From contig NC_086117.1 of assembly GCF_963921235.1 (NCBI RefSeq), positions 24,428,001 to 24,492,000 on the forward strand: DNA of 64,000 nucleotides, read 5' to 3'. Below are positions 301-56,595 of the stretch, piece after piece; within the stretch, counting starts at the first letter, position 1; each line of letters opens with the position of its first letter. The notes beneath the pieces are model-generated. The model saw nothing but the letters and a program-made list of their open reading frames with translations, made no database searches and was not told the origin of the DNA. The stretch is from Mobula hypostoma (taxonomy: Eukaryota). Position numbers and translations under genes: made by a program.

Positions 301-336
301 AGTCGACGTTTCAGGCCGAGACGCTTCGTCAGGACT
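301..336 (-). ncRNA. Minimal hammerhead motif, inverted copy with weakened stem II
   Basis: Reverse complement reads AGTC-CTGACGA-AGCGTCTCGGCCT-GAAACGTC-GACT. Confidence 0.6.
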
Positions 337-378
337 AACTGAAGGAAGAGATAGTAAAGAAGAGATTTTCCTTCAGTT

Positions 379-414
379 AGTCCTGACGAAGGGTCTCGGC
401 CTGAAACGTCGACT
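379..414 (+). ncRNA. Minimal type-I hammerhead ribozyme motif (PLE type)
   Basis: AGTC-CTGACGA-AGG(gtctcgg)CCT-GAAA-CG-TC-GACT: both core boxes intact, stem I AGTC/GACT, stem II AGG/CCT, palindromic ACGT stem III, GUC cleavage triplet. Confidence 0.75.
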
Positions 415-2715
415 GCGCCTCTTCCTATAGATGCTGCTTGGCCTGCTGCGTTCACCAGCAACTTTGATGTGTGTTGCTTGAATTTCCAGCATCTGCAGAA
501 TTCCTGTTGTTTGAACTTACTTTCAAGGCCTCTTTATCTTATGCTTTTGATATTTATTGCTTATTTACTATTATTAGTTTTTTTTCTTCTGTAGTTGCAC
601 AATTTGTTGTCTTTTGCACACTGATTGTCTGTGGGTGAGTTCTTTCATTGATTCTATAATGGTTATTGGATTTATTGAGTACCCCCACAAGAAAACGATT
701 TTCAGGGTTGTACTGTACGGTATATGGCGATATATATGCACTTTGATAATAAATTTCCTTTGAACTTGGAGATGACCACACTTGGCCTGTTGAAGTTTGG
801 TTGTAATTGAAGCTGTTAGTCATGTCTTCATGAACTTGAACTTGAAGTATCAAAGTATGGTTATGTGAGACTGAAATTAAGCATTTCATGCGAGAGGTTC
901 TCAGGAGTGATTGGGATTGTTTATTGGCATTCTCCTCAATAAAAGTTATATATTGCTGGTTTAGGTAGCTGCCAATGGTGCACCAATTAAATACAAGGGT
1001 GAGCAAAAGTCCACAGTCCAAGAAGAACCATTGTCTAAGAGATTTATAGAGCAGGGGAACGTGACAGTGATAAGGAGAGGTTAGACTGTGGAGTGACATG
1101 AAAAGAAGCATAAAGGATATTTCAGAACTTGGCCAGTCTCAGAGCATTTTACAGTCATTGAAGTAACTAATGTAATGTAATGTAATCGTATAATGTAAGA
1201 AACATGGCTGCCTACTTGTACGCTTGGGTATTACAAACATTACTATGATAATGACTGAACGATCTGCTTTGTTAATGTATAGACAGGAAAAGTCCTTGCA
1301 TCTTCATGATACACTGGCCTTAAGATATTTTACCTTAGGGACAGGTTGGGTCTTAGATTCAGACTTCACCACACACTGGCACCGGAGTCCCAGCTTGGAT
1401 TATGTGCTGAAGTGTCTCGTGAAGTACTTAACACACAACCTCCATCAACTGAGGCAGAAGAACAGCAAACAATGAACTGCAGTGTCCTTCATCTGTGAGG
1501 GGAGGTTGGCCAAGGTTGCTCAGGTTTGGACATCTCCGCTTCCCACTCAGTAGGAAACTGGTTTGCCATTACTCCTGAAGAAGACCACACTGGCGTGGAA
1601 ATATGACGCACAGAACAGTCTGGGGGATGCAGTTCCTTTTCTCACAAACACGGAGGAAATGCCACATCTGCTTCTCTTTCGCAATCTATGTGAGCTTGTC
1701 ATAAAGTAATTGCAGCGGCAGTTTTGGGGAGGAGCGTGCAGGTCAGTCCTGACTGAGCATCCGCTCTGCAACGGTCTCCTTACAAGTTCCGGAAGGGAGC
1801 CAGTGCTGTGATCTTGAAGGAGAGGAGGGTCAAGAGGCAGAGGGGAATCTGACCTTAATTACTGCCCATCTCTCCTGTCTGAAGTGCATCTTTGAAAGTA
1901 ATCAGCATCTCATCTTGGACAAAGGGCTTTAATGTGGTGCCATAACTCGAGGCAATCTCAAGATAAATTCCCACACGTCTGCAGGAAGAATTATCCCAAA
2001 TCTCCCACTAATTGGCAAACTTCAATCTGAGAGGCAGAGGAAATGAGAAGGCTTATAGTGTGCTTTATAGGATGCTTTTCAGAAGCAGAATAGACTGCTT
2101 TATTAGAGATGAAAGGGCCAGGCAGGGGAAATCAACCCAACTTCTCTCTCACACACATACAAAATACGTGTGTATGTGTGTGTGTCTCCATGCACATGTA
2201 TAATTTAACTCATACAGTATCTATTTGGCAGTAATCTATCGAGAGAGCAGAGTTCATTCTTTGCATATCTATTTGCATATAAATTGTAACATCCAGGGAG
2301 AAGTATACATATTGTACTGTAGAGTACTTTATACTCTCGGAAATACATCCCGTTGGTATCAACTATAAGGAGTGGATGATGATGCCAACACTGAGGTCTC
2401 AAAATAGCAGCCATCTCAATCCCCAGCATTATTGGTTCCTCGTTACACAGTGCACTCTGCAAAAACAGTAAAAAGTTTCTCTCAAGTCCCAATAAACACC
2501 GCAGACAATGAAGTACTTTTACTGGAAACACAGCAACCAATTTCCTTGTGCGAACTCCCACAGACACCAAGGTAATAAACAGTCAGGAATACACTGCCGG
2601 GGCAGTGGTAGAGGCAGATGTATTAGGAAGATTTAATGCACTCTCAGATAGACAGATGGATGAGAGGAAAATGGAGGGCTATGTCAGAGGGAAAGGACAG
2701 GTTAGATTGATCTTG

Positions 2716-2910
2716 TTGTTGCCCCTTTCTGAGCCTCCTGGCACATCGGGCGGCAGCCTTGCCATTGTTTAGCATTTGCCTGTTTTTTTATGAGGCCGAG
2801 TTGCCAGCTCGATGCTAAAATGGATGGAAAGCGTTCAAGGAGCCGACCGGATTCGAACCCAGGACGACTCACCTCGTAGTCCGGTGCGGATGCCACTACA
2901 CCACTGGCCA
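2716..2910 (-). mobile_element. tRNA-derived SINE with (CAA)n tail and 12-bp TSD, inserted in a CR1 3' end
   Basis: A box TGGTGTAGTGG and B box GGTTCGAATCC on the minus strand. Tail gcaacaacaa. TSD agattgatcttg at 2704-2715 and 2911-2922. Confidence 0.85.
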
Positions 2911-2989
2911 AGATTGATCTTGGAGTATAAGATGTCTGCACAACATTGTGGGCCGAAGGCTGCATACAGTGCTATGCTCTATGATATAA

Positions 2990-3765
2990 ATGGGATAAAA
3001 TTCAAAAATCTGAGCTGCAAAGGGACTTGGGAGTACTCATGCAGAGTTCCCTAAAGGTTAACTTGCAGGCTGAATTGGTGGTGGAGAAGGCAAATGAAAC
3101 TTTAGCATTCGTTTCAAGAGGATTAGACTATAAAAGCAAGGATTTAGTGTTATAAAGCACTGGTGAGGCCTCACTTGGAGTGAGCAGTTTCAGGCTGCTT
3201 ATCTAAGAGATGATGTGCTGATATTGCAGAGGGTTCAAAGGAGGTTCACAAGAGAGATTCTGGGAATGAAAGGTTTATCATATGAGGAGCGTTTGATGGC
3301 TCTGGGCCTGTACTCAGTGGAATTTAGAAGAATGCAGGGGGGGTGGAATCTCATTGAAATCTATCAGATGTTGAAAGGCCTAGATAGAGGTGGAGAGGAT
3401 GTTTCCTATAGTGGGGGAGTCTAGGACCAGAGGGCACAGATAGAGTGGATGTGGAGAGGATGTTTCCTATAGTGGGGGAGTCTAGGACCAGAGGGCACAA
3501 CGTCCATTTAGAATGGAGATCCGGAAGATTTCCTTCAGCCAGAGGGAGGCAAATCTGTGGAATTTGTTGCCACAGACGGCTGTGGAGGCTAGATCATTGG
3601 GTATATTTAAGGCAGAAATTCTTGATAAATGAGGATATGAAAGGTTATGGGGAAAAGGTAGGGGAATGGGGTTGGGAGGGAAATGGATCAGCCATGATAG
3701 AATGACTGAGCAGACCTGACGGGCCAAATGGCCTAATTCTGCTTCTGTTCCTTATGGTCTTATTT
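2990..3765 (+). mobile_element. CR1 LINE 3' fragment, degenerate, with an internal ~60-bp tandem duplication
   Basis: RVQRRFTR...GLSYEERL..LGLYS.E.RR motif and CR1 3' UTR. The segment gtggagaggatgtttcc...agggcaca occurs twice (~3389 and ~3451). Confidence 0.85.
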
Positions 3766-5029: not shown

Positions 5030-5195
5030 TAATATATAACAATTACAGCACGGAAACAGGCCATCTCGGCCCTTCTAGTCCATGCCGAACTCTTACTCTC
5101 ACCTGGTCCCACCGACCTGCACTCAGCCCATAACCCTCCATTCCTTTTCTGTCCATATAGCTATCCAATTTAACTTTAAATGACAACATCGAAGC
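5030..5195 (-). mobile_element. CR1 3' terminus
   Basis: FK.KLDSYMD.KGMEGYG end of ORF2 plus 3' UTR. Confidence 0.7.
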
Positions 5196-5862: not shown

Positions 5863-6177
5863 GTGACAAATCCGTACCACTGTTGCCTTAGATGCTCATT
5901 TGTATGTCTGGCATTCGTAACCTGGGGACGGCCTGTAACCAACTGCAGCCCAACAAATGACCCAGGTATTTGTGCACCTCAAGTTCAGCCACTTGGGCAT
6001 CATCAATTTTCAATGCTCATCTCTGACAGTCACGTCTTCAGAATGAAAGTGCCCTTAGCTTTACAGTTACTACAAAATCTTTGACAGAACTATGAACTCC
6101 TTATGTGGGCTGGAGTCATTTTTCACTTGAACAATTTTAGGTGAAGAGTCTGCTGTGTTAGGGAGGCTGTATAAATA

Positions 6178-6490
6178 CAAGCAACGTATGCAAAATGCTG
6201 GAGGAACTCAGCAGGCCAGGCAGCATCTATGGAAAAGAGTACAGTTGACATTTCAGGCCGAGACCCTTTAATGAGAGTCAGGGTTAGAAGGTGGGGGGAG
6301 GGGAGGAAGAAACACAAGGTGAGACTGAGGGGGGGTGTGGGTGAAGTAAAGAGCTGGGAAGTTGATTGGCTGGAGAAGGGGGAATCTGACAGGAGAGGAC
6401 AGAAGGCCATGGAAGAAAGAAAAGGGAGAGGAGCACCAGTGGGAGGTGATGGGCAGGTAAGGAGATAAGGTGAGAGAGGGAAAAGGGAAA
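6178..6490 (-). mobile_element. Penelope-like 3' UTR/pLTR fragment, hammerhead core decayed
   Basis: gatgctgcctggcctgctgagttcctccagc signature and a pyrimidine-rich UTR. The CTGATGA box is replaced by ctcatta. Confidence 0.75.
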
Positions 6491-8490
6491 ATAACACATC
6501 TTATTGCGGGGGAGAGAAGAGATTCAGGTGCTGGAGTCAGGAGCAAAAGACAAACTGCTGGAAGAAGTCAGGGATCAAACAGCATCTCTGTAGTCAAAAG
6601 GATGGTCAACATTTCAAGTCGAGTCTCTATATTGCGCTGAGAATGTAGAGGGAAAGAGCCAGGAGATAGAAGATGGGCAATGGGTGGAACCACTCGGACA
6701 CTGGTCATCTCCCCTCCCCACTCTCCGTCCTGATGCTGACTCCGAACCTGAAATAGAGAACATCCCTTGGCCTGCTGAGTTCACCCAGGAGCTTTCCACC
6801 ACATGTTGCTGCTGATTTACTTAAATCTGCTTCTCACAGAACTCTGTTCCAACTTGGGCCATCCTGATCCAAGCAGCAGGCTCTTTAGAAGGGAACTGGG
6901 AGATCAGGCCATCGTTTCTGCTCTACCCCCACTCAAAAACATTTGCTTGTCTCACGACAGAACTGCTGTTGGTGGGATTTTCCCATCCATAAATCAGTTC
7001 CTCACGAGAATTGCTTCATTGGTAACACCTCTGGGATACACAGCCAAAGTACAAGCCTGTCTCTTCCTGTGGTTTCCAGATAGACGCCCAGAGGGAGAGA
7101 GGACCCTCTCCACTTTACAGGCTTTCTAGGCCACTGGTCACCACTGACTCCGTCTTACATCAAGTCATAATGACATATAATACAGAATGAGAGCCTTGGC
7201 CCACTCAGAAGAAAAGAACACGACCACCGGGAGAACATGCGAACTCTGCACAAATTAGAACCAGAGGTCAGGAGTGGACGCAGGTCACTGGGATAGCAAG
7301 GCTCGACTGGCTGTGCCACCGTACACACGGCAGTGATTAATGTACAACGTATCCCTGGTACCCATCAAAAGCTTGGGTACAAACGACCCAACATAAGGCA
7401 GCAACATCATTTTATTTCATTCTTGGTAATGAGCTTTCCATCAACGTGCAATGCCTCATTCCACCAACTCAAAAGCATTAACCCACGAGCCTTGAGGCTT
7501 AAAGAAATAACTCAGTTGCCTCATCAATAATCTTTTTTTGCTGTTAATTGTAAATAAGTAATAAGCAATATTCCCCAAAAACATGCAGAGCAGCAATCAA
7601 CGAGAACAACACTCAACACTCAAGATGAACAGATTGTCAATAAACCACTGGCCAGACAGTCAGAGGGTCACCATCTGAATAGGAGACACTGCCAGACATC
7701 AACAGACATCTTTCAAAAGGCGTGAGTGCAAGTTTTATTTACTTTGTGCTGAAGATCTCAAAAGGCACAATCCCAGACAGAATTCTTTAAATGTTTCCGG
7801 CACACAGTCAGTGTTACCAAACCTCCGGCACAGTTTGTCTGTTTATTTGTAAATGCAAAATGTTACCAAGTGTTGGTGGGACTTGCTACTGTGTTCAGTC
7901 AAATGGAACATCGTGGAGTCACAAAATCATTTGCTGATTACAACATGTAAGGAGGCCATTTGGCCCATCAGATCAGTGTTGATTCCCTACTAGATTAGTC
8001 CCCTAGTTGCACCCACTGGTCTTTTCTCCATAGTCTTATAGTTCTTTCCAATTCCTTCTTGAATGGCACGGTCAAAGCTGCCACCACTACATCTGCAGAA
8101 GGTGTATTCCAGATCCAATTCACATCTTCTGTAAAATTGTTTCCCCTCATATCACTGTCCAACCCGTTCATCATTTCATAAAATTCCATCAAATCTACCC
8201 CAGTCTTCTCTACTCCAAAGAAAACAGTCACAGTCTCTAATTCAAGATTCAAGATTGTTTAATGTCTTTTCCAGTACACAAGTGTAAAGGAGAATGAAAT
8301 AATTGTTACTCCAGATCCAATGCAGCACAGAAAGGAACACAGTAAGATTCAGAACACAATAATATATTTTTTAAAAAACACAGTAAATTTCTATAAACGA
8401 GAGAAAATCTGCAGATGCTGGAAATCCAAGTAACGCACACAAAATGCTGGAGGAACTCAGCAGGCCAGGCAGCATCTATGAAAAAGGGTA

Positions 8491-8528
8491 CAGTCAATGT
8501 TTCGGGCCGAAACCCTTCATCAGGACTG
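8491..8528 (-). ncRNA. Minimal hammerhead motif, AUU triplet
   Basis: CAGTC-CTGATGA-AGGGTTTCGGCCC-GAAA-CA-TT-GACTG, 5-bp stem I. Confidence 0.55.
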
Positions 8529-9275
8529 GGAAAAGAAAATGAGGAGTCGGAGTAAGGTGGTGGGGGGAGGGGCGGAAGAGCGACAAGGTGATGGTGAAAT
8601 CGGGAGGGGGGTGGAGTAGAGAGCTGGGAAGTTGATTGGTGAAAGAGATACAGGGCTGGAGAAGGGGGAATCTGTTAGGAGAGGACGGAAGGCCATGGAA
8701 GAAAGAAAAGGGGGAGGAGCACCAAAGTGAAATAATGGGCAGGTAAGGAGATAATTTGAGAGAGGGAAGTGGGAATGGGGAATGGTGAAGGGGGGGCATT
8801 ACTGGAAGTTCAAGAAATCGATGTTCATGCCATCAGGTTGGAGGCTACCCAGACAGAATATAAGGTGTTGCTCCTCCAACTGAGTGTGGCCTCGTGGCCA
8901 CAGTGGAGGAGGCCATGGATGGACGTGTCAGAATGAGAGTGGGAAGTCAAAATAAAATAGGAAATAGGTGGCCACTGGGAGACCCCACTTCTTCTGGTGG
9001 ACAGAGCACAGATGCTCAGGGAAGCCGTCTCCCAATCTGCGTTGAGTATCCCTGATATACAGGAGGCCACACTGGGAGCACCGGATAGAGTAGATGACCC
9101 CAACAGACTCACAGGTGAAGTGTCACCTCACCTGGAAGGACTGTTTGGGTTCTGAATGGGAGCGAGACTCTTTACTTCACCCCCCCCAAACTCTCCCCCT
9201 CCCGGTTTCACCTATCACACTGAGTTCTTCCTCCCTTCCCCCCCACTTTTCACTCTGACTCCTCATCTCCTTCTC

Positions 9276-9313
9276 CAGTCCTGATGAAGGGCCTCGGCCT
9301 GAAACGTCGACTG
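9276..9313 (+). ncRNA. Minimal type-I hammerhead motif, best-preserved copy
   Basis: CAGTC-CTGATGA-AGGGCCTCGGCCT-GAAA-CG-TC-GACTG: canonical CUGAUGA and GAAA boxes, 5-bp stem I, GUC site. Confidence 0.78.
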
Positions 9314-10736
9314 TGCTCTTTTTCATGGATGCTGCCTAGCCTGCTGAGTTCCTCCAGCATTTTGTGTGTGTTGCATAAATATACATAAGATAGCTTATAT
9401 ACATAGATTGATTTATGTCCATAAAGTGACACTAGGCACAGGGGAGTCTATACTTAAGGTGACTGACAGGCAATGATAAAGTTGAGGGCGTGGAGGGGTG
9501 GGTTAGTGGGTGGAGGTGTTGATCAGCCTTACTGCTTAGGGAAAGTAACTGTTTTTGAGTCTGGTGGTCCTGGCGTGGATGCTACATAGCCTCCTCCCTG
9601 ATGGGAGTGGGACAGTCAGTCCACGAGCAGTGTAGGTGGGATCCTTCATGATGTTATTGGCCCTTTTTCCGCCATCTTATGATACTTAAAGTCACTTTAA
9701 GTACAGAGTCTCCTAACAAAAGATATCACTAGACATTTCTCTGTATCAGCCTCTATCCACCACGGATCTACCTGTTCAATCGACCAGGATATAGACTGCC
9801 ACAATCTATCATTACCCGTAACAGTTTATAATACTCATCTACAAACTGAGAAATTGAGTCTTACAACCGTAAGTCATGGTCATTAACAAAGATTAATAAA
9901 ATCTAGCAAATCCCCGGGGAATGCCACTGTTCATCTCCCTCCACTCCAAAATACAACCGTTCATCACAACCTTTTCTTGCCTGTTACTTAGCAAATTGTT
10001 CATTGCTTCCCCAAGTCTAGATTGATCAGCAAACATTACATACATTATATCAACATCCCATTTGTGCTTCGTGCTTCAGCTTTGCTCTAAGCCTGGAACA
10101 TGGCACCTTATCAACAACTGCATTACCCTCGTTAGTTCCGTCTGTTATCTCATCAAACAATTCCACCAAATTAATTAAATACCTTTTGTCCTTTACAAAT
10201 TCAAGCTATCTGGTCTTAATTAGAATCATTTTTCTACAAAATTGCTGACAGAAACTTCCATCCTTTCTCAGCCATCTCCTCCTTCACTATTACTTTTTCC
10301 CTGGTGAAGAATGATGCGAGGAATATATTTAGATCCCTCAGCATCTATGTCAAGTTCTCAATTTTATCCTTAATAAGCCCACTCCTCTATTTGCTACTAT
10401 TATTTATATGTCCATGGAAGACATTTGGATTCCCATTTACAGTAACAGGTAATCTTTTTGCACCCCCCCCCCCCAAGTCTCCAATGTTAAATGTAAACTC
10501 CACTGTTACTCACTTGTATTTACAACCTGACACTTGCTGTATACAACATTTCTTCTGCTTTTCTTTTATTATTCAGGGAGCTCGGGATTTGATTGTTCTT
10601 TCTTTGTTCCCCATGGGAATGGGTGTCAACCGTACCCAAGCCATCTCCTGTTTTACTGTTAAAGCCTGTCAACTTTTCATTGTTGAACTGTGACAGATCC
10701 ACCCTGCTGGCACTAACAGATGATGGGGGCCTAGAT

Positions 10737-12087
10737 AACATAGAAACATAGAAAATCTACAGCACAATACAGGCCCTTCGGCCCACAAAGCTGTTCCAAA
10801 CATGTCCCTACCTTAGAACTACCTAGGCTTTACCCATAGCCCTCTATTTTTCTAAGCTCCATGTAGCCATCCAGGAGTCTCTTAAAAGACCCTATCGTTT
10901 CCGCCTCCACCATCGTCGCCAGCAGTCATTCCACACACTTACCACTCTCTGTGTAAAAAACTTACCCCGACATCTCCTCTGTACCTACTTCCAAGCACCT
11001 GAAAACTGTGTCCTCTCGTGCTAGCCATTTCAGCCCTGGGGAAATGCCTCTGACTATCCACACAATCAATGCCTCTCATTATCTTATATACCTCTATCAG
11101 GTCACCTCTTATCCTCCATCGGAGAAAAGGCCAAGTTCACTCAACCTATTCTCATAAGGCATGCTCCCCAATCCAGGCAACATCCTTGTAAATCTCCTCT
11201 GCACCCTGTCTATGGTTTCCATGTCCTTCCTGTAGTGAGGCGACAAGAATTGAGCACAGTACTCCAAGTGGGGTCTGACCAGGGTCCTATATAGCTGCAA
11301 CATTACTTCTCTGCTCTTAAACTCAGTCCCACAATTGATAGCAACACACATAAAAATTGCTGGTGAACGCAGCAGGCCAGGCAGCATCTATTGGAAGAGG
11401 TACAGTCGATGTTTCGGGCTGAGACCCTTCGTCAGGTGTGTTGCTTGAAATTCCAGCATCTGCAGATTTCCTTGTGTACCACGATTGATGAAGGCCAATG
11501 CACCGTATGCCTTCTTAACCACAGAGTCAACCTGCGTAGCTGCTTTGAGTGTCCCATGGACTCGAACCCCAAGATCCCTCTAATATTCCACACTGCCAAG
11601 AGTCTTACCATTAATGCTATATTCTGCCATCATATTTGACCTACAAAAATGTACCACCTCATAATTATCTGGGTTGAATGCCATCTGCCACTTCTCAGCC
11701 CAGTTCTGCATCCTATCAATGTCCCATTGTAACCTCTGACAGCCCTCCACACTATCCACAACACCCCTAACCTTTGTGTCATCAGCAAATTTACTAACCC
11801 ATCCCTCCACTTCCTCATCCAGGTCATTTATAAAAATCACAAAGAGTAGGGGTCCCAGAACAGATCCCTGAGGCACACCACTGGTCACCAACCTCCATGC
11901 AGAATATGACCCATCTACAACCACCCTTTGCTTTCTGCGGGCAAGCCAGATCTGGATCCACAAAGCAATGTCCCCTTGGATCCCATGCCTCCTTACTTTC
12001 TCAATAAGCCTTGCATGGGGTACCTTATCAAATGCCTTGCTAAAATTCATATACACTACAATGCCTTCTTGCTAAAATCCATATACA
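10737..12087 (-). mobile_element. CR1 LINE, 5'-truncated (RT domain to 3' tail)
   Basis: [38 protein letters not shown] motifs; (ctatgttt)n tail at ~10737-10755. Confidence 0.92.
11340..11478. mobile_element. Short PLE inversion insertion inside CR1
   Basis: Inverted pLTR piece joined to the pLTR 3' end. TSD ccacaattgat (11329-11339) and ccacgattgat (11479-11489), one mismatch. Confidence 0.8.
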
Positions 12088-20164: not shown

Positions 20165-20558
20165 CCTCTCCTTCACCATTCCCCATTCTTGTTTCCCTCT
20201 CACACCTTTTATCCTTTCCCGCCCATGACCTCCCCCTTCCCTTTCTTCCATGGCCTTCTGACCTCTCCTATCAGATTCCCCCTTCTCCAGTCCTTATCTC
20301 TTTCACCAATCAACTTCCCAGCTTTTTACTTCACCCCTCCCCCTCTCCTGGGTTCACCAATCACCTGCCACCTTGTACTTATTCCTCCCCTCCCCCCACC
20401 TTCTCACTCCGATTCCTTCCCCTTTCTTTTAAATCCCGACAAAGGGTCTCGGCCTGAAACACTTTTCCATAGCTGCTGCCTGGCCTGCTGAGTTCCTTCA
20501 GCGCTGTGCGTGTGTTGCTCTGAATTCCCAGCATCTGCAGAGTTTCTCTTGTTTGTGA
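20165..20558 (+). mobile_element. Penelope-like 3' UTR/pLTR fragment, hammerhead decayed
   Basis: Same UTR and terminal signature as the other PLE copies. Confidence 0.75.
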
Positions 20559-23661: not shown

Positions 23662-23818
23662 TAAAAAATGCTGGTGAACGCAGCAGGCCAGGCAGCATCT
23701 ATAGGATGAGATACAGTCGACTGTACCTCTTCCTATAGATGCTGCCTGGCCTGCTGCATTCACCAGCATTTCTGTGTGTGTTGCTTCAATTTCCAGCATC
23801 TACAGGTTTCCTCATGTT
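23662..23818. mobile_element. PLE fold-back insertion, loop-less palindrome, 11-bp TSD
   Basis: Arms 23666-23718 and 23719-23771 (3 mismatches), centred on CAGTC|GACTG. TSD ggtggattcga at 23651-23661 and 23819-23829. Confidence 0.88.
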
Positions 23819-24849
23819 GGTGGATTCGACAGCCTGCTAACTTGATCTCCTTGGTGAGAGGGATGGAATAGGGTGACCATGAATAACTTCAACACCTTAC
23901 GTAGACAAAGGATTTTGTAAGCAGTTGGTGCGAGGAATACAGGAAGTAACCCAATCAGGCCAGTAAACGTTTTGCAGCATTCGATGAAGGCTGAGACACA
24001 CTTTAACTCCATTACACCACTCCCCCCCCCCCGATTCCGTAACTGATCAAATCTTTCTATAACAATAAGTAATCCATTTCTGACTGACCGCCAGCCTTGT
24101 GTGTCTTGAGGGAGGAGGTGGCAGATTTTCAGATTCCCACTTCTTTTTGTGCTGCCTGATTGCCATTATGTTATTAAGGTAAGGTTCATGTGTGGTGCTG
24201 GAATTAGGGTGGAGACAGTGTCACCACACCATTGCCTCATCTACCCCCATGCCCCAGAAAGCCTTACAATTAAGGGCCACTTGCAACTGCTTGAATTAGA
24301 GTAAATTACAAAATCGTTGTGTAATTAAGTCCCAAGAATAAAATCTGCTCTCCCCTCCACCTCTTACTCTGGACTGCCACAGAAAAATTCCTTTCCATCT
24401 ATCTAAGCTCTTCAATTAGATCACCCCTTAAGTTCCAAGAGTTTTTGAAAAGAGAAGTTATTCATTTCACGGGATATGGGGATCATTCACAGGGGCAATG
24501 TATATCGACAATCGCACATTTCCCTTGAGAAGGTAGTGAGAAGCCACCCTGCCCAACATCATCATCATGGAAAAACCGACAGGAGAGATGGAGGGCAGGA
24601 TGTGTCAGGAGTTAAAGGACCAGAGACGTATTTCTGAGTCAGGAGGGTGTGCAGCTTGAAGGACAGACAACCTGCAGATGGTGAGAGTGCCCCGTCCTCC
24701 TTGCAGGAAGTGGAAACATTTTTTGGAGGTGCTGTTGGAGCAGACCAGCAAGTAACTGAAGTACACTTTGAGGATGGAACACTTTGAAGCTTGGAGAAGC
24801 ATTATCTGTCTGTGACAATGAATGAGGGCATGACTGTGTCCTGGTTCAG

Positions 24850-38826: not shown

Positions 38827-40016
38827 AGTAGTCATAGTCATAGTCATAGTCATAGTCATACTTTATTGATCCCGGGGGAAATTAGTTTTCGTTACAGTTG
38901 CACCATAAATAATAAATAGTAATAGAACCATAAATAGTTAAATAGTAGTATGTAAATTATGCCAGTAAATTATGAAATAAGTCCAGGACCAGCCTATTGG
39001 CTCAGGGTGTCTGACCCTCCAAGGGAGGAGTTGTAAAAGTTTGATGGCCACAGGCAGGAATGACTTCCTATGACGTTCAGTGCTGCATTTCGGTGGAATC
39101 AGTCTCTGGCTGAATGTACTCCTGTGCCCACCCAGTACATTATGTAGTGGATGGGAGACATTGACCAAGATGGCATGCAACTTAGACAGCATCCTCCTTT
39201 CAGACACCACCGTGAGAGAGTCCAGTTCCATCCCCACAACATCACTGGCCTTACGGATGAGTTTGTTGATTCTGTTGCTGTCTGCTACCCTCAGCCTGCT
39301 GCCCCAGCACACAACAGCAAACATGATAGTACTGGCCACCACAGACTCGTAGAACATCCTCAGCATCATCCGGCAGATATTAAAGGACATCAGTTTCCTC
39401 AGGAAGTAGAGACAGCTCTGACCCTTCTTGTAGACAGCCTCAGTGTTCTTTGACCAGTCCAGTCTATTGTCAATTCGTATCCCCAGGTATTTGTAATCCT
39501 CCACCATGTCCATACTGACCCCCTGGATGGAAACAGGGGTCACCGGTACCTTAGCACTCCTCAGGTCTACCACCAGCTCCTTAGTCTTTTTCACATTAAG
39601 CTGCAGATAATTCTGCTCACACCATGTGACAAAGTTTCCTACCGTAGCCCTGTACTCAGCCTCATCTCCCTTGCTGATGCATCCAACTATGGCAGAGTCA
39701 TCCCAAAACTTCTGAAGATGACAAGACTCTGTGCAGTAGTTGAAGTCCGCGGTGTAAATGGTGAAGAGAAAGGGAGACAAGACAGTTCCCTGTGGAGCCC
39801 CAGTGCTGCTGATCACTGTGTCGGACACATAGTGTTGTAAGCACACGTACTGTGGTCTGCCAGTCAGGTAATCAAGAATCCATGACACCAGGAGAGCATC
39901 CACCTGCATCACTGTCAGCTTCTCCCCCAGCAGAGCAGGGCGGATGGTGTTGAACGCACTGGAGAATTCAAAAAACATGACCCTCACAGTGCTTGCTGGC
40001 TTGTCCAGGTGGGCGT
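38827..40016 (-). mobile_element. Rex1/Babar-type LINE, second family, long open RT frame
   Basis: 349-aa ORF with FSSAFNTI, GAPQGTVLSPFLF, KFWDDSAIVG, LNVKKTKELVVD, YKYLG; (ctatga)n tail at 38827-38860. Confidence 0.92.
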
Positions 40017-41289
40017 ATATTTTAATCTATTCATTCTCAGCGTAGGAATAGTGATGACAGGCCACCATTCATTGCACCCCTCTGGCCATCTTTGAGAAAG
40101 TGGCTTACTTTCAAATTTTCTTTTGTGATATTCCTGTGAAGCACCTTGGGGGTCTATGTTCATTTTAAGGGTGCCGTTTAAATAAAGGGTAATTGTGGGA
40201 GTAGTTAGAGTACCCCTTTCTGTTGGATGTAGACAATTAAACTTCCTCCAGTGAATCTTCCATACATCCAATGGACCAAAGGCCTCTCTTCCCTTTAAGC
40301 TACAGTGTAATTCCACAAAGATCAAGGCATCAACCATAAATAATTCCAGTTTCTAGACACATGGAGTACATGAACAGGAGGGAATTTGAACGTCTCTGGG
40401 GTAATGAAGTTTGGATCCACAATATTCACTGACCCAGCCTCCATCCCACACAAACAGACTTCCCTGTTCTCAACTCCACAAAACTGGACAGATGTCAAGA
40501 GGAAGTTGCGGGAGGAGTTGATCAGATGATGAAGAAGCTCATTGAGAAGAAATGTTAGGAAGCGAGAAGGAGTAGATAAAAGATGTTTCGATTTGCACAT
40601 TGTTTTCAGTGCCAGAACAACACAAAGATTTCCTCATTCTTTCAGCAATAATACCATTTATTTTTTCATATCCCTCTGAAAGCATAGGAAGTCTTAATGG
40701 GACTTAACGGGCCCTTCTCCAATTGGTGACTGTAACTGGTAGATAGCACAAGGATTAGTGCTTGGGTCGCAGTTTATAAACTACATCGAGAAGTTGGCTG
40801 AGAGGACCAAATGTAATATTTCCCAGTTTGCTGATGACAGAAAACAAATCAGGAATCCAAGTAGAAAGAAAAATGAATAGGGGCTTTAAGGGGATATTGA
40901 CAATTGTGAAACTTATATCAAGAAAACACTGCAGATGCTGGAAATCTGAAATAAAATCAGTAAATGCCGGAAATACTCGGTACACCAAACAGCGTCTTTG
41001 GAAAGAGATCAATATTTCAGATTGAAGACCTTTTATCATAACTAGGGAAAATAAAAAAGAAACAACTTAGTTTTAAAACTAACTGAATGGACAAAAATAT
41101 GGCCGATGGATTAGAATTTGGAAAAATGCAGCTTTATCCACTTTAGGTAAAACTAACAGAAATGCTGAATATTTATTGAAATGGTAAGGGATTGAGAAAT
41201 GTTGGCATTTATAGGGACCTTTCTGCCTCAATGCAGCAGTAGAAGAAACCATGGACAGACGTATCAATATGACAATGGGAAGTCAAGGT

Positions 41290-41820
41290 GACCCTGGCTG
41301 TTGCGGTGGACAGAACCTCCATCAGTGAGGCCAAACCCAGGCTGGAGGAGTAACACCCCACTCCACCTGTGTAGTCGTCAATGTGATGGCATGAACATTG
41401 ATTTTTTTAATCTTCCAGTAATTTCTCTGTTTTTATTTTACCCCCACCCTCCATCCTTCTTTCTTTTTTTCCATTCCGGTTACCCTCTCACCCTTCTGCG
41501 GAACCACCATCATGACCTGACCATCATCTCCCTCTGGTTTCCCACTCTCCTTCCCCTTATCCTATGGCTCTCCTATTAGATTCCTTCTTCAGCACTTTTA
41601 CCTCTTCCACCTATCACTTCCCAGCTTCTTACTTAATTCTCACCTCCCCCCACCCACCCACCTTCTCCCCTCACCTGATTTCACCCATTACCTGCCAGTT
41701 TATACTACTCCCCCTCCCCCACATTCTTATTCTGGCTCCTGCCCCCTCCCTTTCATGTCCTGATGAAGGGTCTTGGCCCAAAACATCATTGCTTATTTCT
41801 CTACATAAATGCTGCCTAGT
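41290..41820 (+). mobile_element. Old PLE 3' fragment with decayed hammerhead
   Basis: gtc-ctgatga-agggtcttggccc-aaaa at ~41757-41785, with the GAAA box mutated. Confidence 0.65.
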
Positions 41821-45790: not shown

Positions 45791-45796
45791 CCAATA

Positions 45797-48110: not shown

Positions 48111-48659
48111 ATCCTTTACAAGTTAATGGCAAAAGGTGTTAAAGGGCAGATGATGGCATGTGTAAGAGACAATACGTAGCAGCTCTGAAATAGCCCTGGG
48201 GCACTCGGGGGTGAACAATCCTTTTCTGTCATTTGAACAAAGAAATGAAACATACAGATTTTTATTTGCTCTTAAAGCACAAGTTTACTTGAGTGGGTTC
48301 CGTTGAAGACCTTCCCCCCAAACAACTGGCAGAGATTTGAAAAATTAACATAACATCCATGTTTCCTACCCCCTCAATGACCAAATGACTGCTTTCCATT
48401 TAACACCAACTAATTCAGCAGAAAGTCAACACCAGTATAATAGGCAAACTATTTTTCAAGGAATGCATGCCCTCAGCTTTAACTGAGAAAAATGGATGGA
48501 GGGGAAGGAGAGGGGAGGGGCTACTGCACAGGAAAGAAGTGAGCTGTAGAGTGTTGGAAAATTAGTCAGGTCCATCGTGGACATTGTCTTCCATAGTATC
48601 TGCAACATCTTCATGCAGCGGTGTCTCAAAAAGCAAATTTGCTTAATGGTCCACCATTA

Positions 48660-50917
48660 AGCAAAAGAAAATCTGCAGATGTTGTAAATCCAAGCAACAC
48701 ACACAAAATACTGGAGGAACTCAGCAGGCCAGGCAACATCTATAGAAAAGAGTACAGTCCACGTTTCGAACAAAAACCCTTCATCAGGACTAGAGAAAAA
48801 AAGATGAGGTGTCAAAATTAAAAGGTGGGTGAGGGGAGGACAGGAGGTGATGGTGAAACGGGGGGGGGATGGGTGAAGTAAGGAGCTGGAAAGTTGATTG
48901 GTGAAAGAGATACGGGGCTGGAGAAGGCGGGGATCTGATAGGAGAGGACAGAAGGACATGGAAGAAAGAAAAGAGGGAGGAGCACCAGAGGGGGGGGGGG
49001 TGATGGGCAGTAAGGAGATTAGGTGAGAGAGGGAAATGGGAATGGAGAAGGTGGGGAGGGCATTACCAGAAGTTTGAACAATCTATGTTCATGCCATCAA
49101 GTCGGAGGCTACTTGGATGGTATATGATATGTTGCTCCTTCAAACTGAGTGTGGCTTCACCGAGACAGTAGTGGATACTATAGACTGGCATGTCAGAATG
49201 GGAATGGAAAGCAAGGAATTAAAATAGGTGGCCACTGGGAGATCCCACTTTTTCTGGCGAATGGTCTCCCAGTCTACGTCGGGTCTACAGCAGGCCACAC
49301 TGGGAGCGCTGAACACAGTGTATGACCCCAACAGACTCACAGGTGAGGTGTCGCCTCACCTGTTTAGGGCCCCGAATGGTAGTGAGGGAGGAAGGGAGGA
49401 GGTGTAGGGGCAGGTGTAACAGTTGTTCCACTTACAAGGATAAGTGCCAGGAGGGAGATCAGTGGGGGAGGGGCAAATGGACAAGAGAGTCTCGGGAGGG
49501 AGCGATCCCTGCGGAAAGCAGAAAGTGGGGAGGGGTAGGATCCCGCTGGAGATGGCGGAAATTACGGAGAATTATATGCTGGACGCGGAGGCTGGTGGGA
49601 TGATAGGTGAGGACAAGGGGAACCCTATCCTTGGTGTGGCGGTGGGAGGATGGGTTGAGGGCAGATGTGCGCGAAATGGAAGCGATGCGGTTGAGGGCAG
49701 CGTTGATGGTGGAGGAAGGGAAGCCCCTTTCTTTGAAAAAAGAGGGGAATCTCCTTCGTTCTGAAATGAAAAGCCTCATCCTGAGTAGATGCGGCGAAGA
49801 CGGAGGAATTGAGAGAAGGGGATGGCGTTTTTACAAGTAGAAGTGTGGGACGAAGTAGCTGTGAGAGTCAGTGGGTCTATAATAGACATCGGTAGATAAG
49901 CTGTCTCCAGAGATACAGACAGTGAGATGGAGAAAGGGAAGGGAGGTGTCGGAAACGGACCAGGTGAATTTGAGGGCAGGTTGGAAGTCGGAGGCAAAGT
50001 TGATGAAGTCGACAAGCTCAGCATGGGTGCAGGAAGCGGCCCCAATGTAGTCGTCGATGTAGCGGATGAAAAGTTGGGCAGTGACGCCAGTGTAGGCTTG
50101 GAATATAGACTGTTCCACGTAGCCGACATAAAGGCAGGCATCGCTGGGACCCATGCTAGTACCCATGGCAACATCTGCCCCTACACCTCTTCCCTCACTA
50201 CCATTTAGGGCCCTAAACAGTCCTTCGAGGTGAGACGACACTTCGCCTGTGAGTCTGCTGTGGTCATCTACTGTACCCGGTGCTCCCAGTGTAGCCTTCT
50301 GGATGTTGGTGAGACCCGACGTACATTGGGAGACCGCTTCGCCAAGCACCTACATTCCGTCCGCCAGAAGAAGCGGTATGTCCCGGTGGCGACTCATTTT
50401 AATTCCAAATCCCATTCACATTCCGACATGTCAGTCCATAGCCTCCTCCGCTGTCGCGATGAGGCCACACTCAGGTTGGAAGAGCAACACATTATATTCC
50501 GTCTGGGTAGCCTCCAACCCCACGGCATGAACATCAATTTCTCGAACTCCCGGTAATACTCCACCACCCCCCACCCCTTCACTATTGCCCGATCCCGTTT
50601 CCCTCTCTCTCCTTGTCTCCTTGCCTTCCCATCACCTCCCTCTGGTGCTCCTCCCCCTTCCCTTTCTTCCATGGCCTTCTACCCTCCCCCTACTTCTCCA
50701 GCCCTGTATCTCTTTCACCAATCAACTTCCCAGCTCTTTACTTCGCCTCCCCTTCCCAGCTTCGCCCATCACCTTGTGTTTCTCCCCCCCCCCACCACCC
50801 ACACCTTTTAATTCTACTCCTCTTCTTTTTTCTCCAGTCCAGCCCGAAACTTGCACTGTACTCGTTTCCATAGACGCTGCCTGGCCTGCTGAGTTCCTCC
50901 AGCATTTTGTGTGTGTT
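48660..50917. mobile_element. Penelope-like retroelement: minus-strand RT to GIY-YIG to pLTR (50170-48660) with an inverted plus-strand GIY-YIG/pLTR copy (50171-50917)
   Basis: PLE RT motifs VAMGTSMGP..A.L.VG, FIRYIDD, LPFL, VYYRPTDSHSY. GIY-YIG region VIYC.RC..C....VGET.R.L..RF..H...EQ..I..L....P.GMN. TSD gtccaccatta at 48649-48659 and 50918-50928, inside a Rex-type LINE tail. Confidence 0.9.
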
Positions 50918-51509
50918 GTCCACCATTACGAACCCCCATCACCAGGACACCTCCTTTTCTCACTGTTACCATCAGGAAGGAGGTATAGGACCCTGAAGGC
51001 ACGCCCTCAGCGATTCAGGAACAGCTTCTTCCCCTCTGCCATCCGATTTCTGAATGGACATTGACTCATGAACTACTTTTTTGGCACTACTTATTTAATT
51101 TAACTATGTAATATAGATTCATACTGTAATTCACGCTTTTTCTCTATTATTATGTATTGCATTGTACTGCTGCCGCAAAGATAACGAATTAAATCTGATT
51201 CTGATTCCATGTGCGGTGTCCCGGGGCAACTGTTCCAAATGATTCAGCTGCCCAGGCTGCATAGGACGAATTCTCGTTTTAACTCCCACAGAATTTTAAC
51301 CTAGTGTACGGACAGTCCGTGCATTCCTTTTGGTTTCACTTGGAACTGTGTAGTTACAAAAGATTTCAAATTAAACTTCTGATTGTAGCAGGTGACCCTG
51401 CAATTGCAACAAATGAGCGACTAGTTGCAAGGAATTTTGAATTCCCCTAGTATTTGAAAGTTTAAGAGTAACGTTGTGGTTAGAAAAAGGATTGAAACTT
51501 AACCCAGTT

Positions 51510-53670: not shown

Positions 53671-54140
53671 AACATAGAAACATAGAAACATAGAAAATAG
53701 GTGCTTTGAGTCTCCACCGCCATTTATTATGATCATGGCTGATCATCCAACTCAGAACCCCGCCCCAGCCTTCCCTCCATACCCCCTGATCCCTTTAGCC
53801 ACAAGGGCCATATCTAACTCCCTCTTAAATATAGCCAATGAACTGGCCTCAACTGTTTCCTGTGGCAGAGAATTCCACAGATTCACCACTCTCTGTGTGA
53901 AGAAGTTTTTCCTAATCTCAGTCCTAAAAGGCTTCCCCTTTATCCTCAAACTGTGACCCTTTGTTCTGGACTTCCCCAACATCGGGAACAATCTTCCTGC
54001 ATCTAGCCTGTCCAATCCCTTTAGGATTTTATATGTTTCAATCAGATCCCCCCTCAATCTTCTAAATTCCAACGAGTACAAGCCCAGTTCATCCAGTCTT
54101 TCTTCATATGAAAGTCCTGCCATCCCAGGAATCAATCTGT
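53671..54140 (-). mobile_element. Young CR1 3' fragment, near-identical to ~25985-26472
   Basis: 127-aa translation almost identical to the 25779 ORF; (ctatgttt)n tail. Confidence 0.95.
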
Positions 54141-54999
54141 GATGTTGTCCATTTTCTTGTCAATAGGATTGCATTCCTCAGAATTAAATCAGAAAATACA
54201 TTGCTTGTCAGGTAATAACTGCAGAGAAAGAATCAAATTTAATATCTCTGTTCTATAACTTTCCATCACAATTCAGACAATCTGAACAACACCCACATAT
54301 TGAGCAGTGTTTGAAGCGTTATAGTTCCTTGTATGATTAACAATTAAACCTAAGGTAGTTGCTGCTTTAAAAAAAATAAACAAATGTGTTGGTGATATGG
54401 GCAAACTTGGTATATTTGGGTTTGGGTCACAAATAGAAACATTACAGGCCTTTCGGCCCACAATGTTGTGCCGACCATGTAACCTACTCTACAAACTGCC
54501 CAGAATTATCCTACCACACCGCCCTCTATTTTTCTAAGCTCCATGTACCTATCTAAGAATCTCTTAAAAGACCCTATTGTATCCACCTCTACTACTTTCG
54601 CTGGCAGTGCATCTCACGCACCCACCGCTCTCTGTGTGAAAAACTTATCCCTGACATCCCCCTAGTACCTACTTCCAAGCACCTTAAAACTGTGCCCTCT
54701 CGTGTTAGCCATTTCAGCCCTGGGAAAAAGCCTCTGGCTATCCACATGATCAATTCCTCTCATCATCTTATACACCTCTATTAGGTCATCTCTCATCCTC
54801 CATCACTCCAAGGAGAAAAGGTCAAGTACACTCAACCTATTCTCATAAGGTATGCCCTCCAATCCAGGCAACATCCTTGTAAATCTGCTCTGCACTCTTT
54901 CTATAGTATCCACATCCTTCTTGTAATGAGGTGACCAGAACTGAACACAGTAATCCAAGTGGGGTCTGACCAAGGTCTTATATAGCTGTAACATTACTT

Positions 55000-56010
55000 A
55001 GAAACCATAGAAACCTAGAAACTACAGCACAGAAACAGGCCTTTTGGCCCTTCTTGGCTGTGCCGAACCATTTTCTGTCTAGTCCCACTGACCTGCATAC
55101 GGACCATATCCCTCCATACACCTCCCATCCATGTATCTGTCTAATTTATTCTTAAATGTTAAAAAAGAACCCGCATTTACCACCTCGTCTGACAGCTCAT
55201 TCCATACTCCCACCGCTCTCTGTGTGAAGAAGCCCCCCCTAATGTTCCCTTTAATCTTTTCCCCCCTCACCTTAACCCATGTCCTCTGGTTTTTTTCTCT
55301 CCTTGCCTCAGTGGAAAAAGCCTGCTTGCATTCACTCTATCTATACCCATCATAATTTTATATACCTCTATCAAATCTCCCCTCATTCTTCTACGCTCCA
55401 GGGAATAAAGTCCTAACCTATTCAACCTTTCTCTGTAACTGAGTTTCTCAAGTCCCGGCAACATCCTTGTAAACCTTCTCTGCACTCTTTCAACCTTATT
55501 TATATCCTTCCTGTAATTTGGTGACCAAAACTGAACACAATACTCCAGATTCGGCCTCACCAATGCCTTACACAACCTCATCATAACATTCCAGCTCTTA
55601 TACTCAATACTTTGATTAATAAAGGCCAATGTACCAAAAGCTCTCTTTATGACCCTATCTACCTGTGACGCCACTTTTAGGGAATTTTGTATCTGTATTC
55701 CCAGATCCCTCTGTTCCACTGCACTCCTCAGTGCCCTACCATTAACCCTGTATGTTCTACCTTGGTTTGTCCTTCCAACATGCAATACCTCACACTTGTC
55801 TGTATTAAACTCCATCTGCCATTTTTCAGCCCATTTTTCCAGCTGGTCCAAGTCCCTCTGCAGGCTCTGAAAACCTTCCTCACTGTCTACTACACCTCCA
55901 ATCTTTGTATCATCAGCAAATTTGCTGATCCAATTTACCACATTATCATCCAGATCATTGATATAGATGACAAATAACAATGGACCCAGCACTGATCCCT
56001 GTGGCACTCC
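55000..56010 (-). mobile_element. Nested younger CR1 with a 246-aa open RT C-terminal frame
   Basis: [28 protein letters not shown]... with its own (tttcta..g)n tail at ~55000-55020. actt is repeated at both junctions. Confidence 0.92.
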
Positions 56011-56370
56011 ACTTCACGGCTCTTGAACCCAATCCCACAGCTGATGAATGCCAACACACCACATGCCTTCTTAACACTGCCAGCCTGCACAGCAGCTTTG
56101 AGTGTCCTATGGACCTGGACCCCAAGATCTCTCTGATCCTCCACACTGCCAAGAGTCTTACCATTAATATAATATTCCATCTTCAAATTTGACCTACCAA
56201 AATGAACCACTTCACACCTGTCTGGGTTAAACTCCATCTGCCACTTCTCAGCCCAGTTCTATATCCTACTGATGTCCCGGTGTAACCTCTGACAACCCTC
56301 CAGACTATCCACAACACCCCCCACTTTTTTGTCATCAGCAAACTTACTAACCCACCCTTCTACTTCCTCA

Positions 56371-56595
56371 ACACACATCAAAGTTGCTGGTGAACGCAGC
56401 AGGCCAGGCAGCATCTCTAGGAAGAGGTGCAGTCGACGTTTCAGGCCGAGACCCTCCTGACGAAGGGTCTCGGCCTGAAACGTCGACTGCACCTCTTCCT
56501 AGAGATGCTGCCTGGCCTGCTGCGTTCACCAGCAACTTTGATGTGTGTTGCTTGAATTTCCAGCATCTACAGAATTCCTGTTGTTTGCGTTTAAA
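56371..56595. mobile_element. PLE fold-back insertion, perfect 87-bp arms, 14-bp TSD
   Basis: Arms 56369-56455 and 56464-56550, loop cctgacga. TSD cttctacttcctca at 56357-56370 and 56596-56609. Hammerhead core at 56457-56488 lacks the 5' strand of stem I. Confidence 0.9.

What the first reader, a model, noticed from the sequence alone, without database searches (positions are those of the whole stretch)
301..56488. A family of minimal hammerhead ribozyme motifs scattered through the locus in Penelope-like repeats
Seen in sequence: the motif (C)AGTC-CTGAYGA-[AGG...CCT or GGG...CCC]-GAAA-CG-TC-GACT(G) occurs at 379-414(+), 301-336(-) and 9276-9313(+). Variants occur at 8491-8528(-, AUU), 48756-48791(-, GUG), ~11403-11435(-) and 56457-56488(+), the last two lacking the 5' strand of stem I. 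Decayed traces are at ~6245, ~20435 and ~41757. Established: CUGANGA and GAAA with an NUH triplet define the hammerhead core, and Penelope-like elements are known to carry minimal type-I hammerheads with a palindromic stem III that are proposed to act as dimers. Inference: this genome carries a very high-copy self-cleaving RNA family that ORF and repeat annotation would miss. I cannot tell whether this particular family is already catalogued.
Basis: partly seen in the sequence, partly recalled or inferred. Interest (0 to 1): 0.8.

Follow-up and report, generated by a model that had tools for sequence, protein, structure and literature searches.

The report
Penelope retrotransposon hammerhead ribozyme motifs
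The scattered self-cutting-RNA (hammerhead) motifs are real, but they are the known minimal hammerhead carried in the end repeats of Penelope-like jumping genes, here as a very abundant and mostly dead family in a cartilaginous fish.

Summary
Observation confirmed. Every cited site exists. The motif AGTC-CTGAYGA-A-GGGT(loop)GCCY-GAA-ACGT-C|GACT is not chance: 4 exact matches against 0 in 100 shuffles. I count 14 copies of the host repeat in the 64 kb. Only three keep a complete motif (379-414+, 9277-9312+, and 301-336- with one stem II mismatch).

Interpretation supported.
- The repeat is the 3' end of a Penelope-like element (PLE). Copies 8394-9166(-), 48658-50349(-) and 50171-50918(+) carry reverse transcriptase and GIY-YIG endonuclease remnants about 290 nt upstream of the hammerhead.
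- These remnants align in the same order with full-length 813-883 aa RT+GIY-YIG ORFs. The flanking repeats of those ORFs hold the same minimal hammerhead.
- Stems I and II, the C3-G8 pair and the palindromic helix III covary across relatives (0 of 500 shuffles reach the observed values).
- Insertions show PLE hallmarks: 5' truncation, head-to-head inverted pairs, a 36-nt "tail" on one side only, and 10-14 bp target-site duplications.

Rfam finds none of the motifs. Self-cleavage could not be tested, because only contigs, not raw RNA reads, were available.

This kind has been published since 2014 (PMC4209133). The scan's first readers have noted the same family repeatedly elsewhere in this genome. 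One fold-back (23662-23818) turns exactly at the predicted cut site. That is suggestive but ambiguous, because the site lies inside a 6-nt palindrome.

The parts
379..414 (+). Intact minimal type-I hammerhead, subfamily A: stem I AGUC/GACU, core CUGACGA, unpaired A, stem II GGGU/GCCU, GAA, palindrome ACGU, C17, predicted cut after C410
   Evidence: 46 bits
301..336 (-). Hammerhead on the inverted arm of the same unit; one stem II mismatch (G10.2 to C)
225..527 (.). Fold-back insertion unit 1 (element 239-513) with a 14-bp target-site duplication AACTTACTTTCAAG at 225-238 and 514-527. The + arm ends with the 36-nt tail; the - arm ends at the short 3' end
6172..6489 (-). Solo subfamily B copy with a decayed hammerhead (about 6243-6279) and the short 3' end
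8394..9166 (-). Subfamily B copy with a GIY-YIG remnant (8931-9122), hammerhead 8492-8527 (AUU triplet, G10.1-C11.1) and tail; long arm of a head-to-head pair
9168..9385 (+). Short inverted arm of the same pair, with intact hammerhead 9277-9312 and the short 3' end
11333..11476 (-). 144-bp subfamily A unit inserted in a LINE (TSD about CCACRATTGAT). Hammerhead 11404-11435 starts at CCUGACGA with no 5' strand of stem I. The inverted 37-nt tail (11436-11472) is joined to its 5' end
20170..20557 (+). Solo subfamily B copy; decayed hammerhead 20432-20466 with a deletion; tail present
23662..23818 (.). Fold-back unit whose two arms both begin with GACTG. The inversion point 23718|23719 is the predicted cut site, inside the palindrome GTCGAC. 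TSD GGTGGATTCGA at 23651-23661 and 23819-23829
41756..41791 (+). Decayed hammerhead (G12 to A) in an old copy spanning about 41300-41800
41007..41043 (-). Very decayed hammerhead-repeat trace
48658..50349 (-). Longest PLE 3' fragment: RT remnant 49834-50349 (RYIDD motif), linker 49462-49830, GIY-YIG remnants 49066-49431, about 290-nt UTR, hammerhead 48756-48791 (G17), tail
50171..50918 (+). Head-to-head partner copy: uninterrupted 115-aa GIY-YIG piece 50209-50553, hammerhead remnant about 50840-50862 (core deleted), short 3' end. TSD TCCACCATTA flanks the whole pair
56369..56587 (.). Fold-back unit 3 inserted in a LINE. The + arm starts at CCUGACGA (hammerhead 56453-56488, no 5' strand of stem I). 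The - arm starts inside stem II. Tail on the + arm only. TSD CTTCTACTTCCTCA

Best explanation
These are copies of the 3' terminal region (pseudo-LTR) of a Penelope-like retrotransposon family of a cartilaginous fish. Each carries, or once carried, the minimal type-I hammerhead typical of metazoan PLEs.

Shown:
- The motif sits about 290 nt downstream of an RT plus GIY-YIG ORF, and 67 nt (short form) or 103 nt (with tail) upstream of the insertion's 3' end.
- Copies are 5'-truncated, often paired head-to-head, and flanked by 10-14 bp target-site duplications.
- Related full-length PLEs carry the same motif in both flanking repeats.
- The stems covary.

Inferred from published work on PLEs:
- In a transcript of tandem units, two hammerheads pair through the self-complementary ACGU to form helix III. 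With help from the element's protein, the RNA is cut after GUC.
- Reverse transcription starts at two internal sites about 36 nt apart downstream of the ribozyme, which gives the tail.
- Priming on both cleaved DNA strands gives the inverted pairs.

The genomic copies in this window are dead-on-arrival fragments. Only three keep a full motif.
For: - Motif and chance.
- Coding remnants upstream. The endonuclease piece has 2,883 relatives at E up to 1e-3, matching the C-termini of 590-883 aa proteins. Those proteins carry RVT_1 plus GIY-YIG.
- Collinear matches to P0133: RT 50% identity, E 3e-37; endonuclease 39% identity, E 9e-26.
- P0133's locus L003 has identical minimal hammerheads at 20-56 and 3155-3191, flanking the ORF. 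L001, L005 and L007 have one 230-560 nt after the stop codon.
- Covariation: 90% of cells paired against 73% shuffled. Eight of 11 pairs change on both sides, including U3-A8 in L001 and helix III palindromes ACGU, AUAU and AAUU. None of 500 shuffles reach this, and slid controls give 16-42%.
- Unpaired A after A9 and G10.1 in every copy, as in PMC4209133.
- Two 3' ends, at 476-478 and 512-513, recur in many contigs of several species and are followed by unrelated AT-rich DNA. This matches the PLE tail and AT-rich targets (PMC11167929, PMC8557442).
- TSDs.
Against: - No Rfam hammerhead model matches, even at E up to 10.
- Pfam does not recognise the window's own RT and endonuclease fragments directly. 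The PLE assignment therefore rests on homology to full-length relatives.
- Most window copies have G10.1-U11.1 rather than the canonical G-C. C at that position accounts for 22-32% of contig depth.
- No full-length element and no tandem pair lies in the window, so no local transcript could form the dimer.
- Cleavage is untested here. Published PLE minimal hammerheads cleave poorly in vitro (PMC4209133), cleavage was dispensable for insertion in vitro, and no reads ending at the cut site were seen in Anolis (PMC11167929).
Confidence: 0.9

Rival explanations
1. The motif is kept in PLE RNA for a job other than self-cleavage, such as a protein-binding or RNA-dimerisation site or part of the internal promoter. 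Under this reading the hammerhead likeness does not translate into meaningful cutting in vivo.
For: - Low in vitro activity of metazoan PLE minimal hammerheads (PMC4209133).
- Catalytic mutants do not affect in vitro insertion, and no RNA-seq ends were seen at the cut site in Anolis (PMC11167929).
- Hammerhead-free Naiad PLEs proliferate well (PMC8557442).
- G-U at 10.1-11.1 in most local copies.
Against: - All catalytic-core positions, H17 and the C3-G8 to U3-A8 covariation are kept across distant relatives. A mere binding site would not be expected to do this.
- The Anolis PLE hammerhead does cleave when its protein is present, with a C3G/G8C rescue (PMC11167929).
- One fold-back here turns exactly at the cut site.
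Confidence: 0.25
2. The short subfamily A fold-back units are MITE-like DNA transposons with terminal inverted repeats and TSDs. They would only happen to contain a hammerhead-like sequence.
For: Units at 239-513, 23662-23818 and 56369-56587 are near-perfect hairpins flanked by 11-14 bp duplications. Rfam scores them as miRNA-like hairpins.
Against: - The arms are unequal. One always reaches the canonical tail end and the other stops near the short end.
- The inversion point differs from unit to unit.
- The same 3' module ends non-inverted, ORF-bearing PLE copies.
- Adjacent inverted 5'-truncated copies, and a tail at one end only, are described PLE features (PMC8557442).
Confidence: 0.03
3. 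The repeat belongs to the CR1/L2-type LINEs that adjoin several copies, for example as a LINE 5' or 3' module, rather than to a PLE.
For: LINE RT sequence lies directly next to the copies at 11333 and 56369.
Against: Both units are bracketed by their own TSDs inside the LINE (CCACRATTGAT; CTTCTACTTCCTCA), so they inserted into it. Other copies lie next to unrelated DNA or to GIY-YIG ORFs.
Confidence: 0.02

Closest known systems
Minimal hammerheads (min-HHRs) of metazoan Penelope-like elements (Cervera & de la Pena 2014, PMC4209133)
   Same: - Type-I topology.
- Short stem I (4-5 bp).
- Unpaired nucleotide between A9 and 10.1.
- G at 10.1.
- No helix III hairpin but a palindromic 15.1-16.1 tract (ACGU), which implies a dimer.
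- Location in the pLTR.
- Mostly solitary, truncated copies, some as close pairs on opposite strands.
   Different: - Stem II is only about 4 bp here, against the 6-8 bp stressed for Schistosoma and Drosophila.
- The 10.1-11.1 pair is G-U in the majority of local copies.
- The host is an elasmobranch, a group not named among the examples in that paper.
Poseidon PLE of Anolis carolinensis, PAc (Frangieh et al. 2024, PMC11167929)
   Same: - Hammerhead a short distance upstream of two internal reverse-transcription start sites that define a 30-40 bp tail.
- AT-rich flanks.
- Cleavage and extension of both DNA strands, which would explain head-to-head pairs.
   Different: - In PAc the ORF starts inside stem II. 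Here the reading frame from the core ATG stops after 14 codons (subfamily B), and subfamily A has no ATG.
- The 3' ends therefore appear to lie in untranslated sequence.
- No biochemistry exists for this family.
Animal non-LTR retrozymes (Cervera & de la Pena 2020, PMC7229834; Li et al. 2026 preprint, 10.64898/2026.07.22.740005)
   Same: Short non-coding hammerhead-bearing derivatives of PLE pLTRs, reported in vertebrates including one chondrichthyan. Dispersed 'monomers' are described.
   Different: Retrozymes are defined by tandem arrays that yield circular RNAs. No tandem copy exists in this window. The units here are TSD-flanked single or fold-back insertions.
Rfam Hammerhead_1 (RF00163) and other Rfam hammerhead models
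   Same: Same catalytic core and type-I connectivity.
   Different: No match at the gathering score or at E up to 10. These models expect a closed helix III and longer stems with loop-loop contacts.

Membership tests
Hammerhead ribozyme (catalytic core) | C3 U4 G5 A6 N7 G8 A9 ... G12 A13 A14 A15.1 ... U16.1 H17, with three helices around the core | tested here: met
   Present in 379-414(+), 301-336(-) and 9277-9312(+). Other copies carry disabling changes: G17, G12A, or a deleted core.
Hammerhead ribozyme (catalytic core) | Site-specific self-cleavage after position 17 | not testable with these tools
   Only assembled contigs were available, with no raw RNA reads.
PLE minimal hammerhead (PMC4209133) | [quoted passage not shown] | tested here: met
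   An A is invariant in all 10 aligned copies, including four foreign PLEs.
PLE minimal hammerhead (PMC4209133) | Conserved G10.1-C11.1 pair | tested here: inconclusive
   G10.1 is invariant. Its partner is C in 7 of 10 aligned copies and U in the 3 complete-motif window copies. C accounts for 22-32% of contig depth at position 402.
PLE minimal hammerhead (PMC4209133) | Palindromic 15.1-16.1 tract in place of a helix III hairpin (dimer design) | tested here: met
   ACGU here and in L001 and L003, AUAU in L005, AAUU in L007. All are self-complementary.
PLE minimal hammerhead (PMC4209133) | Covariation in stems I and II within and between families | tested here: met
   Eight of 11 pairs change on both sides, and none of 500 shuffles reach the observed score. 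Caveat: only 10 sequences, and they were chosen by motif.
Penelope-like element | Single ORF with RT followed by a C-terminal GIY-YIG endonuclease | tested here: met
   Remnants at 49834-50349(-), 49066-49431(-) and 50209-50553(+) align collinearly with P0133 (883 aa). Relatives carry RVT_1 plus GIY-YIG. Pfam does not hit the window fragments themselves.
Penelope-like element | Hammerhead located in the pseudo-LTRs flanking the ORF | tested here: met
   In the window it lies about 290 nt after the ORF stop. In L003 it lies in both flanking repeats, 3,135 nt apart. No full-length unit lies in the window itself.
Penelope-like element | Insertion anatomy: 5' truncation, adjacent inverted 5'-truncated copy, 30-40 bp tail at one end, TSDs | tested here: met
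   Five head-to-head pairs. A 36-nt tail on one arm only. 3' ends at 476-478 and 512-513 in many contigs. TSDs of 10-14 bp. Compared with PMC8557442.
Non-LTR retrozyme | Head-to-tail tandem repeats of hammerhead units that give circular RNA | tested here: not met
   Tandem Repeats Finder reports no such array, and all copies are dispersed or inverted. Circular RNA could not be tested.
Rfam hammerhead families | Score at or above the model's gathering threshold | tested here: not met
   No hammerhead family was listed at the gathering score or at E up to 10.

The most novel reading that the evidence does not exclude
The short subfamily A units may be genomic footprints of ribozyme action.

- Their inner ends cluster at the hammerhead. 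Both arms of 23662-23818 begin at GACTG, the predicted 3' cleavage product. Two independent units (11436 and 56455) begin at the same C just before CUGACGA.
- If a genome-wide tally showed that 5' ends and inversion points pile up at the cut site, these insertions would be the first in vivo evidence that PLE hammerheads cut the template RNA before reverse transcription. The excess would have to exceed what the GTCGAC palindrome can explain by microhomology joining.
- It would also suggest that the RNA dimer held by helix III is copied from both DNA ends.
Probability: 0.2. Interest if true: 0.55.

Novelty: new member of a known kind. Interest (0 to 1): 0.28.

Why it matters
The finding confirms that standard RNA-family annotation (Rfam) misses a ribozyme motif present at high density in this genome. 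It also gives a clean, TSD-delimited set of PLE insertions whose ends can be read. The biological role of PLE hammerheads is still open: activity in vitro is poor, cleavage is not needed for insertion in vitro, and no cleavage ends have been seen in Anolis RNA-seq. A genome with a young, abundant family of very short units could be used to ask whether the templates were cut at the ribozyme. As a discovery it is ordinary, because the kind has been described since 2014.

Tried and rejected
- **Rfam.** At the gathering score and at E up to 10 there was no hammerhead hit. The only hits on these loci are miRNA-precursor models scoring the fold-back hairpins below threshold. These are treated as artefacts of the inverted pairs.
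- **Pfam on the window's own ORF fragments.** No RVT_1 or GIY-YIG hit. This was resolved through full-length relatives.
- **Protein Atlas.** It gave only a lead: RVT_1 and HTH_animal clusters.
- **ViennaRNA monomer and dimer folds**. The hammerhead-compatible fold is -7.0 and -12.4 kcal/mol, against minimum free energies of -11.0 and -14.6 for an alternative pairing. The dimer minimum is a plain extended duplex. The double-hammerhead with intermolecular helix III cannot be written as a nested structure, so this was not decisive.
- **Sequencing runs.** All runs offered were Logan contigs whose RNA status is only a guess. RNA ends, strand and expression could not be read, and no pile-up of ends at the cut site was reported among the listed rows.
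- **Subfamily A against B identity.** Hammerhead 84%, next 62 nt 77%, tail 66%. This is only weak evidence of preferential conservation, because the B copies are decayed.
- **LINE-module and MITE readings.** Considered and rejected on TSDs and arm asymmetry.
- **L002, L006 and L004.** The L002 and L006 contigs end too soon after the ORF to show a hammerhead. L004 breaks off inside one.

Full report
**1. Observation**

The sequence at 379-414(+) reads AGTC CTGACGA A GGGT CTCG GCCT GAA ACGT C GACT.
- Its reverse-complement twin lies at 301-336(-).
- A near-identical copy with T at the free core position 7 lies at 9277-9312(+).
- An exact pattern CTGANGA-N6-30-GAAACGTCGAC occurs four times, against none in 100 shuffles.
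- A 19-nt box about 20 nt downstream occurs 13 times against 0.03 expected. The motif is therefore part of a longer repeat.
- I count 14 copies in 64 kb. Three have a complete motif. The rest show CpG-type decay, deletions or 5' truncation.

**2. What the repeat is**

*Extent and subfamilies.* A window-against-window BLAST and an alignment show two subfamilies.
- Subfamily A is young: 88-97% identity between copies.
- Subfamily B is old: about 70-76% identity.
- Both share a fixed 3' end and have variable 5' ends.

*Coding remnants.* Subfamily B copies run up to 0.75-1.7 kb upstream.
- Their translations show a GIY-YIG-type endonuclease: VIY..C..C..(Y)(I)GET ... HF ... LN, at 50209-50553(+), 8931-9122(-) and 49066-49431(-).
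- In the longest copy there is also a reverse-transcriptase segment with RYIDD, at 49834-50349(-).
- Pfam does not score these fragments.

*Link to full-length elements.*
- A HMMER search of 1.84 billion representatives with the 115-aa endonuclease piece found 2,883 relatives. Many of these match at the C-terminus of 590-883 aa proteins.
- Those proteins carry RVT_1 plus GIY-YIG.
- The window's RT and endonuclease pieces align collinearly with one of them, P0133: residues 500-607 at 50% identity (E 3e-37) and residues 774-881 at 39% identity (E 9e-26).
- The nearest named protein is a Hypanus sabinus (stingray) model, mis-named mucin-2. Earlier notes of the scan call the genome a fish.

**3. 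The hammerhead in relatives, and covariation**

*Relatives.*
- The contig encoding P0133 (L003) has the motif CC CTGAAGA A GGCC..GGCC GAA ACGT C GG twice. It sits at 20-56 and 3155-3191, in both repeats flanking the ORF.
- L001, L005 and L007 have one copy 230-560 nt after the stop codon.
- In the window the motif lies about 290 nt after the ORF stop, the same layout as L003.

*Covariation.* On a 10-sequence alignment the named structure is paired in 90% of cells, against 73% after shuffling.
- Eight of 11 pairs change on both sides.
- None of 500 shuffles reach the observed values. Sliding the partners gives 16-42% paired.
- Notable changes are U3-A8 replacing C3-G8 in L001, the variant described for Schistosoma in PMC4209133.
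- The helix III tracts are ACGU, AUAU and AAUU, each self-complementary.
- The unpaired A after A9 and G10.1 are invariant.

*Caveats.* The set is small and was picked by motif. The most complete local copies have G-U at 10.1-11.1.

*Variation across contigs.* Position 402 (U11.1) is the only site inside 379-415 that varies at 10% or more in all four contig sets. It changes to C, which keeps the pair. One further change, at 414, is listed at 10% or more in a single small run. Seven changes at six sites are listed in the next 51 nt.

**4. Insertion anatomy**

The features described for PLEs in PMC8557442 and PMC11167929 are all present.
- **5' truncation.** Summed contig depth rises about fourfold from the hammerhead to the 3' module.
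- **Head-to-head inverted pairs.** These are 239-513, 8394-9166/9168-9385, 23662-23818, 48658-50349/50171-50918 and 56369-56587.
- **Two alternative 3' ends 36 nt apart.** They lie at 476-478 and 512-513 and recur in many contigs from several species, followed by unrelated AT-rich DNA.
- **Tail on one side only** of each unit.
- **TSDs of 10-14 bp**.

The copies next to LINE sequence are bracketed by their own TSDs, so they inserted into the LINE.

**5. Mechanism**

*Shown:* anatomy, homology and covariation.

*Inferred from the literature:*
- Transcripts of tandem units bring two hammerheads together through the palindromic tract.
- The cut after GUC is probably protein-assisted.
- Reverse transcription starts internally at two sites downstream.
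- Both DNA strands can prime, which gives the inverted pairs.

*Not testable here:* whether this family cleaves. All runs offered were contigs of uncertain RNA status.

**6. A detail worth following**

- The fold-back at 23662-23818 turns exactly between GTC and GAC. Both arms therefore start with the predicted 3' cleavage product.
- Two independent A units start at the same C before CUGACGA. Contigs from two species also show unit starts at 380-382.
- First-reader notes from other windows of this genome report many such fold-backs turning at the hammerhead. These notes are leads, not evidence.
- GTCGAC is a palindrome. Joining of two cDNAs by microhomology would give the same sequence without any RNA cleavage, so this stays ambiguous.

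**7. Comparison and novelty**

- The motif meets the descriptive features of PLE minimal hammerheads (PMC4209133). The host repeat meets those of PLEs.
- It is not a retrozyme in the strict sense, because there are no tandem arrays. It is invisible to Rfam.
- PLEs are known in cartilaginous fishes (PMC8455134). Hammerhead-bearing PLE derivatives were reported in one chondrichthyan (10.64898/2026.07.22.740005).

This is a new member, at most, of a known kind.

Noticed in passing
window 427-436 with 489-498 (same columns in 56485-56587, 8394-8495, 48658-48759, 23719-23821): The roughly 100-nt module after the cut site has a conserved long-range stem (UAGAUGCUG with CAGCAUCUR). It encloses the short 3' end and stops about 17 nt before the tail end. 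Copy 48658-48759 shows a compensatory C-G to U-A change. It is possibly the element recognised by the reverse transcriptase.
   Followed up: partly
window 365-382 and 9258-9280: A polypyrimidine tract plus AG, resembling a splice acceptor, ends at or just inside the first bases of stem I's 5' strand. Several mini-units begin 1-2 nt after this AG (11436, 56455, and contig joints at 381/382). In Drosophila virilis Penelope an intron ends at the 5' edge of helix I (PMC4209133).
   Followed up: no
window 304-411, 23671-23766, 56426-56493: The fold-back units score as miRNA precursors in Rfam below threshold (MIR1888, mir-641, mir-3926; 46-52 bits). If transcribed they would form near-perfect 60-130 bp hairpins, which are potential small-RNA sources.
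   Followed up: no
window 38938-39987(-) and 55267-56007(-), also 11100-11330 and 11480-11900: CR1/L2-type LINE fragments (RVT_1, plus ALKBH8_N in the first) are abundant in the window. Two of them were hit by hammerhead mini-units.
   Followed up: partly
protein P0001 (Hypanus sabinus XP_059828265.1): A RefSeq model named 'mucin-2 isoform X2' ends in a PLE GIY-YIG endonuclease domain that is 68% identical to the window's piece. It is probably a repeat-derived misannotation.
   Followed up: no
window 11436-11472(-): In this 144-bp unit the 37-nt tail is not at the 3' end. It is inverted and joined to the 5' end of the hammerhead arm, an unusual placement of the PLE tail.
   Followed up: partly
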